DNA of 63,858 bases, counting the filler, from Octopus bimaculoides (taxonomy: Eukaryota): assembly GCF_001194135.2 (NCBI RefSeq). It is 3 parts of 2 records of this genome, joined end to end, with 100 filler letters (N's around TTAATTAATTAA, not from the genome) between each part and the next. Parts side by side here need not be neighbours in the genome. Positions count along the whole stretch, not along the records: positions 1 to 12,789 come from NC_068982.1; 2 more parts are not named here. The stretch is one strand, 5' to 3'. The notes beneath the pieces were generated by a model. That model was given only the letters and a program-made list of their open reading frames with translations, ran no database searches and was not told the origin of the DNA. The position numbers and the translations under genes are program-made. Shown one piece after another: positions 690 through 10,077 of the stretch; positions within the stretch are counted from its first letter, which is position 1, and every line of letters begins with the position of its first letter.

Positions 690-1472
690 NNNNNNNNNNN
701 NNNNNNNNNNNNNNNNNNNNNNNNNNNNNNNNNNNNNNNNNNNNNNNNNNNNNNNNNNNNNNNNNNNNNNNNNNNNNNNNNNNNNNNNNNNNNNNNNNNN
801 NNNNNNNNNNNNNNNNNNNNNNNNNNNNNNNNNNNNNNNNNNNNNNNNNNNNNNNNNNNNNNNNNNNNNNNNNNNNNNNNNNNNNNNNNNNNNNNNNNNN
901 NNNNNNNNNNNNNNNNNNNNNNNNNNNNNNNNNNNNNNNNNNNNNNNNNNNNNNNNNNNNNNNNNNNNNNNNNNNNNNNNNNNNNNNNNNNNNNNNNNNN
1001 NNNNNNNNNNNNNNNNNNNNNNNNNNNNNNNNNNNNNNNNNNNNNNNNNNNNNNNNNNNNNNNNNNNNNNNNNNNNNNNNNNNNNNNNNNNNNNNNNNNN
1101 NNNNNNNNNNNNNNNNNNNNNNNNNNNNNNNNNNNNNNNNNNNNNNNNNNNNNNNNNNNNNNNNNNNNNNNNNNNNNNNNNNNNNNNNNNNNNNNNNNNN
1201 NNNNNNNNNNNNNNNNNNNNNNNNNNNNNNNNNNNNNNNNNNNNNNNNNNNNNNNNNNNNNNNNNNNNNNNNNNNNNNNNNNNNNNNNNNNNNNNNNNNN
1301 NNNNNNNNNNNNNNNNNNNNNNNNNNNNNNNNNNNNNNNNNNNNNNNNNNNNNNNNNNNNNNNNNNNNNNNNNNNNNNNNNNNNNNNNNNNNNNNNNNNN
1401 NNNNNNNNNNNNNNNNNNNNNNNNNNNNNNNNNNNNNNNNNNNNNNNNNNNNNNNNNNNNNNNNNNNNNNNN

Positions 1473-1815
1473 CCACACCAATACCCTCGCATCACACCGC
1501 GCACACACTACAACTGACCAACTACTTTCTCCCTTCCCCATTTTCACACTACATACGTCAAGATCACCAGCATTCTATCTCCCACACACAGCCCCTCGTT
1601 CTTCGATCACCGTTTGTTATCTCCCCCTTTTCTTAGCTCTCCTGAAAAAAGAATTTCTAACTTCCGGCAACCATTGTTATGATCAGCCATTATTATGATT
1701 GACCGTTGACTGGACACTATTCAATTTTTTTTCTCCGTGTTTTTCTCCTTGTCTCCGTATTCTATCTGTTGAAGAGCGTAGCTCGAAACGTCAAAGACTT
1801 TCCGTATTCCCGGAG
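1473..1815 (+). mobile_element. Dispersed repeat, probably a Penelope-like terminal repeat, with a minimal hammerhead-like motif at 1761-1797
   Basis: TCTAT-CTGTTGA-A-GAG-cgtag-CTC-GAAA-CGT-C-AAAGA. Homologous minus-strand copies at 42808-43010 and 54458-54640. Assignment to Penelope-like elements is inferred from the motif architecture. Confidence 0.65.
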
Positions 1816-2141
1816 TATATTTTGAAATGATATTATTATTGGGCAGTCTTACCTACACTGCATTATAAATTTTAACAGTTGAACAGGTTAGCAGACATTT
1901 CATGCTGCACTGTAAGGTCAGGATAAAGTCCATTGTCAAAATGGGGGAAGGTAGGTGTAAATAGCCAAACTGTGAAACTATAACAAATTGGCTAGACTTT
2001 AGCAAACCTATATAAGCAGAGACAATTGTACACTCAGTTTTTGTGACAGTTAAAGATTTTTTCTGTGAGACAAGGTTGTTCAATTGGATTCTGGAAGCTA
2101 TGATTGCCAGTTTAGTTCATGTATTTTGTGCTTTCTGTTAG

Positions 2142-2224
2142 GCATTTATGGACTTATCTTATGCTCGAGGAATTCGCCAGAACTTTTGCTTGTCAGATTT
2201 AAATAATTTCTGTGTCACATCTGG
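2142..2224 (+). CDS. Candidate isolated internal exon, product unknown (AFMDLSYARGIRQNFCLSDLNNFCVTSG)
   Basis: Acceptor ttttgtgctttctgttAG, donor GG|GTGAGT, 83 nt, one of three frames open. No homology recognised. Confidence 0.35.
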
Positions 2225-2597
2225 GTGAGTACAAAAATCTCTTAAATTATATTATTGTAATATTTATGCGAATTTTGAAACCTGCATTTGTGGTAGGTTG
2301 TGTAGTAATTTTGCTTGCTATTTTCTGTTAAGACAATGTTGAAAAATTTGTATAAATAGCTAAAAGGTGTATGAATTTAATTTTTCATGTAGCTAATTTT
2401 TGGTATAAGACAACTAAAGTGTAAATTTTGTCTAATGGTTACTCAGCATGCTTGTATGAATTAGTTTTGTGTGAATTTATAGCAAATTTATTATTTGTTT
2501 GGCCTTATTTTTTAACTATAATTATTGATGTAGTAGGGCAGCCGTTTTGTGTCATGAACTTTTAGTTTAAATTGTTGCCTTGACATTAGATTTACGT

Positions 2598-2760
2598 CCA
2601 AATTTCGAAAACCAAATTTATGAAACCAAATTTACGAATCCAAATTCTGAAAACCAAATTTATGAATCCAACGAAACTAAATTTACGAATCCAAACTTTT
2701 GAAATAAAATTTAGGAAATCAAATTTATGAAACCGAGTTTCTGAATCCAAATTTCTAAAT
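2598..2760. repeat. Degenerate 14-bp minisatellite, consensus about CCAAATTTATGAAA, roughly 12 units
   Basis: ccaaatttcgaaaa ccaaatttatgaaa ccaaatttacgaat ccaaattctgaaaa ccaaatttatgaat ... Confidence 0.9.
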
Positions 2761-2865
2761 TGTATATATTTTACTTTTGTAAATAGTTTGACTGCACGTC
2801 TAGTGTGGCATTAATTTATTGGTTCCTATATATTTACATATATACATATACACATACATATACTT

Positions 2866-2959
<94 letters not shown>

Positions 2960-3189
2960 TTATATATATATATACATATATATATACTTATATATACATA
3001 TACATACACACACACACATATATATATATGTATATATATACTCAAGTATTTGATATGAGCATTTCAAAGTTCGTTTCGACATTTTTCATTTTCTGCCGAC
3101 CGAAACTGCGTCTGCGCAGTGGATTTTGAAAAAAATATAATATATATCTAGAAGATATGTGTGTTTTGTCTCGTAGTCATACGTTAATC

Positions 3190-3276
3190 TTTGACGGCTG
3201 GTTACTGAAGAGAATTTGCCTAGTAAATTTTTTTATCTACTAAAAAAATTCGAAACCTATAGGTCTAACCGTTAAA
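3190..3276 (+). ncRNA. Type I hammerhead ribozyme, apparently intact; predicted GUC cleavage after C3265
   Basis: Stem I GGTTA(3200-04)/TAACC(3266-70), extended by TTTGAC/GTTAAA beyond a GGCT bulge. Core CTGAAGA(3205-11). Stem II GAATTT(3212-17)/AAATTC(3246-51) plus TAGTA/TACTA. GAAA(3252-55). Stem III ACC-TATA-GGT (10-bp palindrome), then C17. All canonical core positions are present. Confidence 0.88.
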
Positions 3277-3578
3277 AATAAGGTAAAAGTCTTTTTTCTT
3301 CCCTTTGAAATGTTTTAACGTTGTGGATTTCGGTCGTTTTTGACTGTCTTCTAGCGTGTAGTAATTATAGGTAATTTGTCTTATATTTTATATATATATA
3401 CTTATATATATATATATATATACATATTTATACTCATACATATATATTTATACTTATATATACATATATATATATACATATATATATACACATATACATA
3501 CATATATATATATATATATACATATGTATATATATATATATGCATATATATATACTTTTATATATATATATATATATA

Positions 3579-3636
<58 letters not shown>

Positions 3637-4480: not shown

Positions 4481-4806
4481 ACCAAGTAGCATCTGCGTCT
4501 GCACTTGTGTGTGTCTGTTTGTATTTTTGTGTGGGTGTATATATTCATATGTGCGTGTATACTCGTGAGTGTGTGTGCGTTCGTGTGTTTGCGCACGCGC
4601 GCGTACGTGCTTATATAAGATTGTTTTTGAAGTTTTGAGAATAACAACTGAAGATATACTGTTGGTGTGACAATATACCGAGAGTCATAAATTTCCATCT
4701 AGCAAAAATTGTTTACGTACCACATGAGAATTTGCCACGAATGATGGTCACTGAAAAAAATAAACAGAACCTATTCATTTACTCAGCAATACTAAAATCT
4801 CCTTAT

Positions 4807-4978
4807 CTGTAACCATGTACCTTTACCTATTTGTGATTGAAACAGGTAAATAACAACTGTTTTGCTTGTGAATTGATAAATATAGCACATCTGTAGCCAT
4901 GTACCTTTACCTATTTGTGATTGAAACAGGTAAATAACAACTGTTTTGATTGTGAATTGATAAATATAGCACATCTGT
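4807..4978. repeat. Two-copy 84-bp tandem duplication, near identical
   Basis: CTGTAACCATGTACCTTTACCTATTTGTGATTGAAACAGG... at 4807 and CTGTAGCCATGTACC... at 4891. Confidence 0.95.
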
Positions 4979-5848
4979 GCATGAAAATCGAACAGAAGAA
5001 CATCTGACGCAGCACTGAGACCAATTAACTTGATTACCAATCGTATTTGCTTGCATTAGAGAATATATTCATTTATATATTTTCTACTAACCTACCTCAA
5101 TCATATCGGTAAACACCACCGTAAAACTTAGAATTGAAAAATTTCCAGATTCCAATAAAATATGTTCATTGTAACGTATGGGTTGAATACTTTTCGACTT
5201 TTGTAACGACAAAATTTCATATTCGGTATATAACTAAATATATACAAACGCACACAAAGTCAAGTGCAAACGAATATACGCATTGAAGAGAAAACAGAGA
5301 GAGAGAGAGAGATCAGGAGGAGGAACGGCGCTGCGTGACAGAAATAAAGAGAAATGGGGAGAGAAAGCTAGAGCGGAAAACTAACGAGGACAAAGATGTG
5401 GATATGCGAAAGACGGTGACAAGGAGGAGTACATGTCACAAGAAATGCTTCTATATGTTTTTAAAAAATCATTAAGTGCCTGTAAAATCGTATGTTAATA
5501 GTTATATCTGTCCCTGGTCTCGTTTGAAAATGGACATTGTCCGACATGTCTGTCATAAATCATGAACTGACTCTGTTGTAATATATCAAGTTTAAAAGTA
5601 TCTCAACATTAAATTACATTGCTGTAGAGTTGGGTAGCAGACGTAATAAAACGTTTGACATAAAATATAGTAGAACTAATGGAAGCTGGAACACACAGCC
5701 TCACGCAGATTTTCTTATGGTTATGTCATATAGCCACAAATACATAGACACACACACACTCATCTATATATTCGTTTGTATGTAGCTGTGTGTGTCTGTG
5801 TGCGCGTGCGTTTGTGTGTATATGTATACATACCACACACACACACGC

Positions 5849-5892
<44 letters not shown>

Positions 5893-6808: not shown

Positions 6809-7261
6809 AGTTAGTGTTTTCAAAATGTTAAGCATTTCAAGTAACTCATCAGTTTTAAAATTCTACCAAGTACCATTTCTTATAGAGGACATTTCAGACG
6901 TCTATGTATCGAGGGAAATACATACCTAATAATGTAACATAAGATGTAATAACGCTACCATAAATATTTTAAAATTGCAAGTTAAAATTAATTACGATAT
7001 GCATTATAAATACGATACCAAAGTTAAACATCCCAGGAGTGTGACCTCGAACAGTCATATATGAAAATAAAAATACATATTTTGAGCTAAGTTTGGTTTC
7101 TGCAAAAGTGAACTCGTCTTAATTTTCCAGCGAAGGTAAGAAACATACATATATACATACATATTGGCATAAATCTTGAGATAAAACTGAAAAATGACAT
7201 ACATGCTTATCGTAATTTTGAGCGGCTTTCTAGAAGAAAAATAGACTATATATATATTATT

Positions 7262-7475
7262 TCTTTATCGCCCAAAAGTGGCTAAACATAGAGGGGACAA
7301 ACAAGGACAGACAAAGTGATTAAGTCGATTACATCGACCCCAGTGCGTAACTGGTACTTAATTTATCGACCCCGAAAGGATGAAAGGCAAAGTCGACCTC
7401 GGCGGAATTTGAACTCAGAACGTAACGGCAGACGAAATACCACTAAGCATTTCGCCCAGCGTGCTAACGTTTCTG
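7262..7475 (-). mobile_element. tRNA-derived SINE (family A)
   Basis: gattaagtcgattacatcgaccccagtgcgtaactggtacttaatttatcgaccccgaaaggatgaaaggcaaagtcgacctcggcggaatttgaactcagaacg; the B-box is on the minus strand. Confidence 0.9.
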
Positions 7476-7729
7476 TTGGTATGTGTGTATGTGTGTGTGT
7501 GTGTGTGTATGCATGTGTGTACGCGCATACACACACACACACANNNNNNNNNNNNNNNNNNNNNNNNNNNNNNNNNNNNNNNNNNNNNNNNNNNNNNNNN
7601 NNNNNNNNNNNNNNNNNNNNNNNNNNNNNNNNNNNNNNNNNNNNNNNNNNNNNNNNNNNNNNNNNNNNNNNNNNNNNNNNNNNNNNNNNNNNNNNNNNNN
7701 NNNNNNNNNNNNNNNNNNNNNNNNNNNNN

Positions 7730-8646: not shown

Positions 8647-9854
8647 TATTTTGCTTAAAAGAGTTCCAACACTGTCTGTTTTTTATGTTTTATTTATATT
8701 CCTGCAGAACTAATGTGGGGTATAGAATATGGAATATACAATATATAATATGATATACAATATACAATATAAAATAAAATAACATAAAAATGGATGGCAC
8801 CATGAAAGAAAGTATTGAATGTAGATGAAATATTGAGTGTTCAATATAAAGGATCAAATATATAAATATAAATATATATATATAAAGGCGACTCGAGTTT
8901 CNNNNNNNNNNNNNNNNNNNNNNNNNNNNNNNNNNNNNNNNNNNNNNNNNNNNNNNNNNNNNNNNNNNNNNNNNNNNNNNNNNNNNNNNNNNNNNNNNNN
9001 NNNNNNNNNNNNNNNNNNNNNNNNNNNNNNNNNNNNNNNNNNNNNNNNNNNNNNNNNNNNNNNNNNNNNNNNNNNNNNNNNNNNNNNNNNNNNNNNNNNN
9101 NNNNNNNNNNNNNNNNNNNNNNNNNNNNNNNNNNNNNNNNNNNNNNNNNNNNNNNNNNNNNNNNNNNNNNNNNNNNNNNNNNNNNNNNNNNNNNNNNNNN
9201 NNNNNNNNNNNNNNNNNNNNNNNNNNNNNNNNNNNNNNNNNNNNNNNNNNNNNNNNNNNNNNNNNNNNNNNNNNNNNNNNNNNNNNNNNNNNNNNNNNNN
9301 NNNNNNNNNNNNNNNNNNNNNNNNNNNNNNNNNNNNNNNNNNNNNNNNNNNNNNNNNNNNNNNNNNNNNNNNNNNNNNNNNNNNNNNNNNNNNNNNNNNN
9401 NNNNNNNNNNNNNNNNNNNNNNNNNNNNNNNNNNNNNNNNNNNNNNNNNNNNNNNNNNNNNNNNNNNNNNNNNNNNNNNNNNNNNNNNNNNNNNNNNNNN
9501 NNNNNNNNNNNNNNNNNNNNNNNNNNNNNNNNNNNNNNNNNNNNNNNNNNNNNNNNNNNNNNNNNNNNNNNNNNNNNNNNNNNNNNNNNNNNNNNNNNNN
9601 NNNNNNNNNNNNNNNNNNNNNNNNNNNNNNNNNNNNNNNNNNNNNNNNNNNNNNNNNNNNNNNNNNNNNNNNNNNNNNNNNNNNNNNNNNNNNNNNNNNN
9701 NNNNNNNNNNNNNNNNNNNNNNNNNNNNNNNNNNNNNNNNNNNNNNNNNATATATAAATTCAAATTACGATGAACGTAAACAAACAAATGAAGTTTGCTT
9801 TTGGAAGCGTTGAGATGTCTTAGAAAGTTAAAGTGAGATGTAAGAAAATATATT

Positions 9855-10077
9855 TATTTCTTTATTGCCCACAGGAGGCTAAACATAGATGGGATAAACA
9901 AAGGGATTAAGTCGATTACATCGACCCCCAGTGCCTAACTAGTACTTATTTTATCGACCTTGAAAGGATGAAAGGCAAAGTCGAACTCGGTGAAATTTGA
10001 ACTCAGAACGTAAAGGCAGACGAAATACCGCTAAACATTTCGCCCGGTGTGCTAATGTTTCTGCCAGAGCACCGCCT
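9855..10077 (-). mobile_element. Full-length family A SINE with a 14-bp target-site duplication
   Basis: Same body as 7262-7475; flanked by TAAGAAAATATATT at 9841-9854 and 10078-10091. Confidence 0.92.

What the first reader, a model, noticed from the sequence alone, without database searches (positions are those of the whole stretch)
3190..3276. Apparently intact full-length type I hammerhead ribozyme with complementary stem I and stem II bulges
Seen: every canonical element is present in the correct order. These are stem I GGTTA/TAACC, CTGAAGA, a G-C-closed 6-bp stem II, GAAA, stem III ACC-TATA-GGT and a GUC triplet. Stem I extends past a GGCT bulge (3196-99) and stem II past a GCC internal loop (3218-20); GGC and GCC are complementary. 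Established: natural hammerheads need stem I-stem II tertiary contacts to cleave at physiological Mg2+, and palindromic stem III is typical of Penelope-associated and retrozyme hammerheads. Inference: this is a young or maintained, probably active ribozyme. It lies in a ~330-bp CpG-rich block between (TA)n tracts, with an upstream palindrome ACTGCG-tctg-CGCAGT (3105-20) and a TATA-like stretch, resembling a solo Penelope-type terminal repeat.
Basis: partly seen in the sequence, partly recalled or inferred. Interest (0 to 1): 0.9.

Follow-up and report, generated by a model that had tools for sequence, protein, structure and literature searches.

The report
Hammerhead ribozyme in a dispersed repeat
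The sequence is a genuine, intact-looking hammerhead ribozyme motif, but it sits in one silent copy of an about 335-bp mobile repeat present roughly 100-200 times per genome, which is the ordinary way such ribozymes occur in animal genomes.

Summary
A structure descriptor finds exactly one hammerhead in the window, with about 7e-4 expected by chance. Rfam gives no hit at its curated cut-off. The best is the RAGATH-1 hammerhead model at 16.9 bits (cut-off 56.3), because stem II is 40 nt and stem III only 3 bp.

The motif is not a lone locus. The block 3041-3380 is one copy of a middle-repetitive family, roughly 100-200 copies at 80% likeness or more, found in four coded organisms. The hammerhead segment is one of its two best-conserved segments. 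Independent copies share the same 5' and 3' ends and are each flanked by (TA)n. No head-to-tail unit joints were seen, so the family consists of dispersed monomers inserted into TA microsatellites.

Best reading: a short non-autonomous retroelement of the Penelope-like/non-LTR-retrozyme kind. Its type I hammerhead has a palindromic helix III (ACCUAUAGGU) that probably works as a dimer.

This copy is about 4% from the family majority. It has an A.C mismatch in distal stem II, lacks 17 nt of a 3' hairpin, has no partner ribozyme within 12.8 kb and no detectable transcript. It is a new member of a known kind, of low to moderate interest.

The parts
3041..3380 (+). One monomer of a middle-repetitive, ~335-bp dispersed repeat family (about 100-200 copies per genome, four coded organisms)
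   Evidence: Contigs and reads of DNA runs lie on 3041-3367 at 80-99% likeness. Depth was calibrated against contigs taken as single-copy. The 5' end at 3041/3042 and the 3' end are shared by independent copies.
3200..3204 (+). Helix I, 5' strand (GGUUA)
   Evidence: Pairs with 3266-3270. No variant at 10% or more is listed across the family.
3205..3211 (+). Catalytic core C3-A9 (CUGAAGA)
   Evidence: No variant at 10% or more is listed in the family.
3212..3251 (+). Helix II: 6-bp G-C-closed stem, 3x3 internal loop, 5-bp distal stem (8 bp in most copies), loop
   Evidence: The family majority has A3230 and T3237, which restores UAGUAAAU/AUUUACUA.
3252..3255 (+). Core G12 A13 A14 and A15.1 (GAAA)
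3255..3264 (+). Helix III: ACC-UAUA-GGU, a 10-nt perfect palindrome that can form an intermolecular 10-bp helix in a dimer
   Evidence: RNAcofold gives the dimer -46.2 kcal/mol against 2 x -16.7, with this helix formed between the strands.
3265..3266 (+). Predicted self-cleavage site (GUC|U, after C3265)
   Evidence: Position 17 of the motif. No read ends accumulate here in RNA runs. This is predicted, not shown.
3266..3270 (+). Helix I, 3' strand (UAACC)
3190..3199 (+). Possible distal extension of helix I (UUUGAC, pairs with 3271-3276) and GGCU bulge
   Evidence: The alternative register GACGG/CCGUU is preferred by the energy model. Variants seen in other copies (3192G, 3195T, 3273G, 3275G) give no clear covariation.
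3059..3123 (+). Second strongly conserved block of the repeat, holding the palindrome ACTGCG-tctg-CGCAGT (3105-3120); function unknown
   Evidence: Depth peak in every DNA run. Palindrome read.
3350..3380 (+). 3' end of the unit. This copy lacks 17 nt (between two TTATAGG) that in most copies form the hairpin AAGUUACC-UGUUAUA-GGUAAUUU
   Evidence: Loose-end consensus AAGTTACCTGTTATAGGTAATTTCTCTTAT behind 3361 in all DNA runs.
2827..3040 (.). Upstream (TA)n microsatellite: target or flank of the insertion
   Evidence: Other copies also have (TA)4-6 directly before their 5' end, followed further upstream by unrelated sequence.
3389..3633 (.). Downstream (TA)n microsatellite
   Evidence: Some other copies end ...GGTAATTT followed by ATATATATAT.

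Best explanation
3041-3380 is one dispersed, monomeric copy of a short (~335 bp), protein-less retroelement family that carries a type I hammerhead ribozyme. The family is probably a non-autonomous derivative or partner of Penelope-like elements, the same kind as animal 'non-LTR retrozymes' and Penelope pseudo-LTRs. Proposed mechanism, all inferred: the unit is transcribed and the hammerhead folds with helix I open. Because helix III has only 3 bp but is a perfect palindrome, two ribozymes (two units on one transcript, or two transcripts) pair through a 10-bp helix III and each cuts after GUC (C3265 here). This trims transcripts to defined ends for reverse transcription. A GIY-YIG endonuclease/reverse transcriptase supplied in trans then inserts the copy into (TA)n microsatellites. 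Shown here: the motif, its family-wide conservation, the copy number, the defined ends, the (TA)n flanks, and the lack of transcripts from this copy. This particular copy is most likely an inert relic whose catalytic core happens to be intact.
For: The motif is complete and occurs once in the window, and chance expectation is ~7e-4. Family: summed contig depth over the hammerhead block is 1.0-1.37e4 in runs whose contigs taken as single-copy have depth ~50-65, which gives ~150-250 copies. Organisms B, C and D give ~60-130 copies. The hammerhead block 3196-3279 and the block 3059-3123 have the highest depth, while 3148-3183 has 5-10 times less. All seven listed variants at 10% or more within 3190-3276 fall in helix II. 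None is listed in the 47 nt of core, helix I and helix III, where about 5 would be expected at the unit's overall rate (6 variants of the table were not printed). The majority T3237 restores an A-U pair, giving an 8-bp distal helix II. 3213 A>G (~35%) and its partner 3250 T>C (~45-60%) could be a compensatory A-U to G-C change. Independent copies begin at the same base, preceded by (TA)n and then unrelated sequence, and end at ...GGTAATTT(CTCTTATATTTT). Dimerisation through the palindromic helix III is favoured by ~13 kcal/mol. Literature: animal type I hammerheads typically have a 1-2 bp helix III with a palindromic loop and act as dimers, and they occur in Penelope pseudo-LTRs (PMC4209133). 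~300-bp low-GC units with type I hammerheads are non-LTR retrozymes (PMC7229834). Retrozyme monomers are common and dispersed, and retrozymes are related to Penelope pseudo-LTRs (bioRxiv 10.64898/2026.07.22.740005). (TA)n is a preferred target of some Penelope-like clades (PMC8557442).
Against: No Rfam hammerhead model reaches its cut-off. No cleavage has been observed. The few RNA reads and RNA contigs of the family run across 3265/3266 uncut. No reverse transcriptase or GIY-YIG ORF lies in the window, and I could not compare the unit with any Penelope-like consensus, so the Penelope link rests on resemblance and on the (TA)n target. Other retroelements also target TA repeats (from my own knowledge, not tested). 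Covariation could not be phased: 3212 G>C and 3251 C>A in a subfamily would break the G10.1-C11.1 pair. The energy model prefers a non-hammerhead fold (-16.7 against -10.5 kcal/mol). Copy numbers rest on a rough depth calibration, because the stretch chosen for calibration turned out to be repetitive too.
Confidence: 0.7

Rival explanations
1. It is a solo pseudo-LTR or an extremely 5'-truncated copy of an autonomous Penelope-like element, not a separate non-autonomous family.
For: The hammerhead is of the type found in Penelope pseudo-LTRs (PMC4209133). It has (TA)n flanks (PMC8557442). Retrozyme consensus sequences match the termini of Penelope-like elements (bioRxiv 10.64898/2026.07.22.740005), so the two categories grade into each other.
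Against: Copies from several individuals and species start at the same position (3041/3042), with (TA)n and then unrelated sequence upstream. They show neither a graded series of truncation points nor a common longer upstream consensus. The depth profile shows no 3' bias. No RT/EN remnant lies in the window.
Confidence: 0.2
2. The hammerhead-like motif is a chance or decayed feature of an unrelated repeat (SINE, satellite or other) and has no catalytic role.
For: No Rfam hit at threshold. Chance motifs of this descriptor are expected ~100 times in a genome of a few Gb. No cleavage signal is seen in RNA data. A subfamily has changes at the 10.1/11.1 pair.
Against: The motif segment is one of the two best-conserved parts of the family in four organisms, with no listed variant at 10% or more in core, helix I or helix III. 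Helix II is longer and more regular in the majority sequence than in this copy. The palindromic helix III and the G10.1-C11.1 closure were not required by my descriptor, yet they match the published hallmarks (PMC4209133). No tRNA-like head was found.
Confidence: 0.07
3. This individual copy has been recruited by the host, for example to process a host transcript or produce a circular RNA at this locus.
For: The core is intact and CpG is relatively enriched.
Against: No read at 95% likeness or more to this copy appears in ~36 million RNA-seq reads from three runs. No coding sequence or long ORF lies nearby. The surroundings are microsatellites, assembly gaps and other repeats. There is no second ribozyme to release a defined RNA.
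Confidence: 0.03

Closest known systems
Animal non-LTR retrozymes (Cervera & de la Pena 2020, PMC7229834; Li, Clavereau & Pollet 2026 preprint, 10.64898/2026.07.22.740005)
   Same: The unit is protein-less, low in G+C and ~300 bp long, and carries one type I hammerhead with a short helix III. It is multi-copy and conserved across related species. Monomeric dispersed copies are reported as common derivatives.
   Different: Retrozymes are defined by tandem arrays with a hammerhead in every unit and by abundant linear and circular RNAs. Here the locus is a single unit, no unit-to-unit joints were seen in DNA contigs or reads, and RNA is barely detectable. Helix II is far longer (40 nt with an internal loop) than the canonical 4 bp plus loop.
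Hammerheads in the pseudo-LTRs of Penelope-like elements (Cervera & de la Pena 2014, PMC4209133; Craig et al. 2021, PMC8557442)
   Same: A type I motif with a G10.1-C11.1 closure, a longer-than-usual helix II (6 bp or more), a short helix I (5 bp) and a small palindromic helix III suited to dimers. The insertion lies in a (TA)n microsatellite.
   Different: No RT/GIY-YIG ORF is nearby, and there is no unpaired nucleotide between A9 and 10.1. Helix III has 3 bp plus a tetraloop rather than being minimal. Homology to a Penelope terminus could not be tested.
Schistosoma Sm-alpha repeat, newt satellite 2 and cave-cricket pDo500 hammerheads (classical animal type I hammerheads, cited in PMC7229834)
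   Same: ~330-bp repeated units, each carrying one type I hammerhead. The newt ribozyme also needs dimers because of a weak palindromic helix III.
   Different: Those are high-copy satellite or SINE-like families (thousands to >100,000 copies), mostly tandem and well transcribed. I saw no sequence resemblance beyond the core, but that rests on my recollection of those sequences, not on a test.
Rfam RF03152 RAGATH-1 hammerhead and the other Rfam hammerhead models
   Same: The core, helix I and the GUC site align to the model.
   Different: The score is 16.9 bits against a cut-off of 56.3. The model's short helix II is replaced by a 34-nt insertion, and 12 positions of its 9-bp helix III are deleted. 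The RAGATH-1 family is bacterial, so the match is one of shape only.

Membership tests
Hammerhead ribozyme (type I) | Conserved core C3 U4 G5 A6 N7 G8 A9 ... G12 A13 A14, an A15.1-U16.1 pair, and H17 (not G) at the cleavage site | tested here: met
   CUGAAGA 3205-3211, GAAA 3252-3255, A3255-U3264, C3265.
Hammerhead ribozyme (type I) | Three helices around the core, with helix I open (the 5' and 3' ends) | tested here: met
   Helix I has 5-6 bp, helix II has 6 bp plus a distal stem, helix III has 3 bp plus a tetraloop.
Hammerhead ribozyme (type I) | Match to a curated covariance model at its gathering score | tested here: not met
   The best hammerhead model is RF03152 at 16.9 bits (cut-off 56.3). 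No Hammerhead_1 or Hammerhead_3 row appears at E<=10. Overlapping matches of one clan are collapsed by the tool, so lower-scoring hammerhead models may be hidden.
Hammerhead ribozyme (type I) | Helices supported by compensatory changes among homologues | tested here: inconclusive
   Only per-site variant frequencies were obtainable. 3213 A>G with 3250 T>C, and the majority T3237 opposite A3226, fit pairing. 3212 G>C with 3251 C>A does not. No haplotypes are available.
Hammerhead ribozyme (type I) | Site-specific self-cleavage leaving a 2',3'-cyclic phosphate and a 5'-OH | not testable with these tools
   RNA reads are too few. Those present cross 3265/3266.
Hammerhead ribozyme (type I) | Tertiary contact between helix I and helix II elements | tested here: inconclusive
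   A bulge 5 bp from the core in helix I and an internal loop 6 bp from the core in helix II exist, and GGC/GCC are complementary. No variant of these positions is listed at 10% or more, so there is no covariation. An alternative pairing of the GG exists.
Non-LTR retrozyme | Tandem head-to-tail units, each with a type I hammerhead | tested here: not met
   The window has one unit and one hammerhead. No unit-to-unit joints appear in DNA contigs or reads of six runs. One minor rearranged contig (3271 to 3082) is seen in X13.
Non-LTR retrozyme | Abundant unit-length linear and circular RNA | tested here: not met
   4-9 reads per ~12 million in three RNA-seq runs, with no back-joints. RNA contig depth is 2-25. 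The libraries may be poly(A)-selected, which would miss circles.
Non-LTR retrozyme | Short (150-450 bp), low-GC, non-coding unit | tested here: met
   ~335 bp, 33% G+C, no unit-specific ORF.
Penelope-like element (autonomous) | ORF with a telomerase-like RT and a GIY-YIG endonuclease | tested here: not met
   No non-repetitive ORF of 70 aa or more lies near the unit. The listed ORFs are microsatellite or N translations.
Penelope-like element (pseudo-LTR or non-autonomous derivative) | Sequence homology to the terminus of a Penelope-like element of the same genome | not testable with these tools
   No eukaryotic repeat library or genome is at hand. The metagenome scans gave only a chance 22-nt match.
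Penelope-like element (pseudo-LTR or non-autonomous derivative) | Insertion bias for microsatellites such as (TA)n | tested here: met
   This copy lies between two (TA)n tracts. At least five other copies have (TA)n directly at the 5' end, and some have it at the 3' end.
tRNA-derived SINE | tRNA-like head with A and B boxes | tested here: not met
   ARAGORN finds nothing. By eye only a partial A-box-like GCGCAGTGG is at 3114-3122, and no B box follows.
MITE (Tc1/mariner-type, TA target) | Terminal inverted repeats | tested here: not met
   The 5' end ACTCAAGTATTTGAT and the reverse complement of the 3' end show no similarity (read). Self-BLAST shows no inverted match between the ends.

The most novel reading that the evidence does not exclude
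The family may represent a distinct architectural variant of the animal type I hammerhead. Its tertiary clamp would be a 3-bp Watson-Crick interaction between a helix I bulge (GGC 3196-3198) and an internal loop of an unusually long helix II (GCC 3218-3220), instead of the canonical loop 1-loop 2 contacts. The ribozyme would be carried by a retroelement that spreads as single units into (TA)n rather than as tandem arrays. That would mean the ribozyme acts in trans between transcripts, or as a monomer, during retrotransposition.
Probability: 0.12. Interest if true: 0.5.

Novelty: new member of a known kind. Interest (0 to 1): 0.25.

Why it matters
It adds one more family to the large catalogue of hammerhead-bearing retroelements in animals. 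It also gives a clean example in which the ribozyme-bearing unit is dispersed as monomers inside TA microsatellites rather than arranged in tandem. If the family's autonomous partner were identified, it could help test what hammerheads do for Penelope-like elements, which is still an open question (PMC8557442 notes that the function is unclear). For this particular locus nothing suggests a host function.

Tried and rejected
(1) Rfam scans of the whole piece and of 3150-3320 gave no hammerhead at threshold. The many miRNA 'hits' (mir-3149, mir-297, mir-466 and others) all lie on (CA)n/(TA)n low-complexity hairpins below their gathering scores and are artefacts.

(2) The simple pattern CTGANGA-N6-36-GAAAC found nothing because helix II is 40 nt long.

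(3) I looked for other copies inside the window by BLAST and found none.

(4) I looked for relatives in metagenome contigs. The 29-mer gave nothing. The 21-mer gave one chance match in a GC-rich, bacterial-looking contig (L001) with no homology beyond 22 nt.

(5) My first copy-number estimate (~10,000) was wrong, because summed contig depth had not been divided by sequencing depth. After calibration it is ~100-200.

(6) The palindromic loose-end sequence GGTTCGTCCATCGATCGATGGACGAACC in runs X23 and X24 looked like a variant helix. It appears at unrelated places as well, so I take it to be a library bridge or ligation junction, not biology.

(7) I considered a second, degenerate hammerhead at CGAAAC-ACTGCG..CGCAGT-G (3100-3121). 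I rejected it because there is no CUGANGA, no helix II, and a G at position 17.

(8) SINE and MITE readings fail (no terminal inverted repeats).

(9) Organism identification failed. An exact-protein look-up of a window ORF found nothing. The extreme microsatellite density made me think of a penaeid shrimp, for which Penelope-element hammerheads with a small palindromic helix III are mentioned in PMC4209133, but this is a guess and nothing rests on it.

Full report
OBSERVATION. The sequence at 3190-3276 contains, in the correct order, every element of a type I hammerhead.
- Helix I: GGUUA 3200-3204 with UAACC 3266-3270.
- Core: CUGAAGA 3205-3211.
- Helix II: closed by G3212-C3251, with 6 bp, a 3x3 internal loop (GCC/AAA), a 5-bp distal stem UAGUA/UACUA and a 12-nt loop.
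- GAAA 3252-3255.
- Helix III: ACC-UAUA-GGU at 3255-3264.
- GUC, with the scissile bond after C3265.

Each pair was verified. A distal extension of helix I (UUUGAC/GUUAAA) past a GGCU bulge is also possible. A descriptor I wrote finds exactly this one site on either strand of the piece. It requires helix I >=5 bp, helix II >=4 bp, helix III >=3 bp including A15.1-U16.1, and H17. In order-2 Markov sequences trained on the window it finds 0 sites in 40 Mb and 86 Mb, and 4 in 112 Mb. That gives about 7e-4 expected here, but of the order of a hundred chance sites in a genome of a few Gb. So the motif is real as an observation, but by itself it does not prove a ribozyme.

COVARIANCE MODELS. Rfam 15 gives no hammerhead match over the whole piece at E<=10. 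In a 171-nt scan only RF03152 (RAGATH-1 hammerhead) matches, at 16.9 bits against a cut-off of 56.3. The alignment shows why. Helix I, both core strands and GUC align. The model's short helix II is replaced by a 34-nt insertion, and 12 positions of its 9-bp helix III are deleted. The field finds Penelope-type and retrozyme hammerheads with structure descriptors rather than with these models (PMC4209133, PMC8557442). I therefore treat this as a failed membership test of the curated models, not as a refutation. The minimum-free-energy fold (-16.7 kcal/mol, z = -1.75) keeps helix II but mispairs the core. The hammerhead fold evaluates to -10.5 kcal/mol. Energy models ignore the tertiary structure of the core, so this is weak evidence either way.

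THE MOTIF BELONGS TO A REPEAT FAMILY. Public DNA runs of the source organism (coded A) and of three other coded organisms (B, C, D) hold many diverged copies of 3041-3367. Summed contig depth over the hammerhead block is 1.0-1.37e4 in runs X1 and X3. Contigs taken as single-copy in the same runs have depth about 50-65. This gives roughly 150-250 copies at 80% likeness or more. Organisms B, C and D give about 60-130 copies. Raw reads of X24 give about 50. My first impression of about 10,000 copies was an error of normalisation.

Depth, and hence conservation, is highest in two blocks, 3059-3123 and 3196-3279, the second being the hammerhead. It is 5-10 times lower in 3148-3183. Of the variants that reach 10% of depth, 24 lie in 3040-3189. 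Seven lie in 3190-3276, all of them in helix II. None is listed in the 47 nt of core, helix I and helix III (six variants of that table were not printed). The family majority has T at 3237 and A at 3230. T3237 pairs with A3226 and turns the distal helix II into a perfect 8-bp stem UAGUAAAU/AUUUACUA, which the window copy breaks with an A.C mismatch. 3213 A>G (about 35%) and its pairing partner 3250 T>C (about 45-60%) may be a compensatory change. However, 3212 G>C and 3251 C>A in part of the family would break the 10.1-11.1 pair. Without read-level haplotypes I cannot phase any of these.

ENDS, FLANKS, ARRANGEMENT. Contigs from several individuals and species start to match at 3041/3042 (ACTCAAGTATT...). 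Directly upstream each has a short (TA)n run and then unrelated sequence. At the 3' side most copies read ...AGTAATTATAGG-AAGTTACCTGTTATAGG-TAATTTCTCTTATATTTT and then diverge or run into (TA)n. The window copy lacks 17 nt between two TTATAGG repeats. This removes a hairpin (AAGUUACC-UGUUAUA-GGUAAUUU) present in most copies.

No joint linking the end of one unit to the start of the next was reported in any DNA run. One low-depth rearranged contig was seen in X13. The window holds only this one copy and no second hammerhead. The family is therefore a set of dispersed monomers with defined ends, inserted into TA microsatellites. It is not a tandem satellite, and it is not a graded series of 5'-truncated long elements. 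The unit has no tRNA-like head, no terminal inverted repeats and no coding capacity.

EXPRESSION. About 12 million reads were sampled from each of three 2026 RNA-seq runs. Only 4-9 reads per run lie on the unit at 88% likeness or more. None is 95% alike, so none can be assigned to this locus. No ends pile up at 3265/3266 and there are no back-joints. RNA assemblies of other runs contain a few family members at depth 2-25, and these contigs and the few raw reads run across the predicted cleavage site. The libraries may be poly(A)-selected and would under-sample cleaved or circular RNAs. This shows that the locus is silent in these samples. It does not show that the ribozyme is inactive.

WHAT IT MOST LIKELY IS AND HOW IT WORKS. 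The architecture matches published descriptions. Animal type I hammerheads usually have a very short helix III capped by a palindromic loop, which makes them poor monomers but good dimers. Penelope-element variants have a longer helix II, a short helix I and a conserved G10.1-C11.1 pair, and they lie in the pseudo-LTRs (PMC4209133). Units of about 300 bp and low G+C with such ribozymes are the 'non-LTR retrozymes' (PMC7229834). A 2026 preprint relates these to Penelope pseudo-LTRs and reports that dispersed monomers are common (10.64898/2026.07.22.740005). (TA)n is a preferred target of some Penelope-like clades (PMC8557442).

Here ACCUAUAGGU is a perfect 10-nt palindrome. RNAcofold predicts a dimer at -46.2 kcal/mol against -33.4 for two monomers, with that helix formed between the strands.

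My best explanation (confidence 0.7) is a short non-autonomous retroelement of the Penelope/retrozyme kind. Its hammerhead, acting mainly as a dimer, trims element transcripts. Its copies are inserted into TA repeats by an enzyme supplied in trans. The steps from transcription to insertion are inferred. The motif, the family, the ends and the flanks are shown.

The window copy is about 4% diverged from the majority, with about 13 substitutions plus the 17-nt deletion. It has an intact core but a weakened helix II, and no partner ribozyme nearby. It is most likely an inert relic that might still cleave in vitro.

RIVALS.
- A solo pseudo-LTR or truncated autonomous element (0.2). This cannot be excluded without the genome's Penelope-like consensus sequences, but the shared 5' end argues against it.
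- A chance motif in an unrelated repeat (0.07). The family-wide conservation of exactly the catalytic parts, and hallmarks my descriptor did not ask for, make this unlikely.
- Host recruitment of this locus (0.03). Nothing supports it.

A bulge 5 bp from the core in helix I and an internal loop 6 bp from the core in helix II are in plausible positions, and GGC/GCC are complementary. No variant of these positions is listed in the family, so nothing can be said from covariation. The same GG can also pair with C3269-C3270 in the alternative fold. The idea remains an untested hypothesis, and I give it about 0.12.

VERDICT. This is a new member of a known kind, not a new kind. Interest is low to moderate (0.25). 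A specialist would expect such motifs in an invertebrate-like, repeat-rich genome. The only mildly unusual points are the long, interrupted helix II and the strictly monomeric, TA-targeted dispersal.

Noticed in passing
window 1500-1832: A super-abundant interspersed repeat. Summed contig depth reaches up to 2.3e6 in runs whose contigs taken as single-copy have depth ~60, which is tens of thousands of copies. Raw-read depth is ~11,000 against ~1.5. Nearly all other copies continue past 1812 with AGCGTCATACTAATA..., so the window copy is truncated or interrupted there. It is also present in organism B.
   Followed up: partly
window 1833-2600: The stretch I chose as a 'unique' calibration region is itself moderately repeated, with depth 5-100 times that of contigs taken as single-copy. 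Almost the whole piece seems to be made of repeats, microsatellites and gaps.
   Followed up: partly
window 7257-7475 and 9854-10063: Two direct copies (88-92% identical, ~210 bp, 2.6 kb apart) of another repeat. Each is followed by a (TG/CA)n-rich tract. This is probably another interspersed element.
   Followed up: no
window 4805-4972: An 84-bp unit duplicated in tandem at 97-98% identity, which looks like a young local duplication.
   Followed up: no
window 2598-2754: An AT-rich minisatellite of a 14-bp unit (CCAAATTTATGAAA, ~11.6 copies, 68% matches), directly upstream of the (TA)n tract that flanks the hammerhead unit.
   Followed up: no
window 12619-12789: A GGT/GAT-rich minisatellite (periods 6, 15 and 39) that runs into (TG)n at the edge of the piece.
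   Followed up: no
window 690-1472, 7544-7729, 8902-9749, 11132-11755: Four runs of N (186-848 bases, 2,441 in all), each adjoining a microsatellite. These are assembly gaps at simple repeats. About ten dinucleotide or tetranucleotide microsatellites lie in 10 kb of real sequence.
   Followed up: yes
window 5787-5871, 10712-10853 and other (CA)n/(TA)n tracts: Dozens of sub-threshold Rfam miRNA matches (mir-3149, mir-297, mir-466, mir-1277 and others) fall on low-complexity hairpins. All are far below their gathering scores and are artefacts of simple repeats.
   Followed up: yes
runs X23 and X24 (loose ends on window 1775-1806, 3132, 3223-3267): The palindrome GGTTCGTCCATCGATCGATGGACGAACC is joined to reads at many unrelated positions. 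About 90-95% of these reads run on into unlike sequence. It looks like a bridge or ligation junction of a proximity-ligation library, not genome sequence.
   Followed up: partly
window 3100-3121: CGAAAC followed by the hairpin ACTGCG-tctg-CGCAGT and then G resembles the 3' half of a hammerhead (GAAA plus helix III). It has G at position 17 and no CUGANGA or helix II upstream. It lies in the second conserved block of the repeat, whose function is unknown.
   Followed up: partly
L001 2801-2822 (metagenome contig WNFR01135549.1): A 22-nt exact match to GGTTACTGAAGAGAATTTGCC(+1) in a GC-rich, bacterial-looking contig. There is no similarity beyond it, so it is a chance match.
   Followed up: yes
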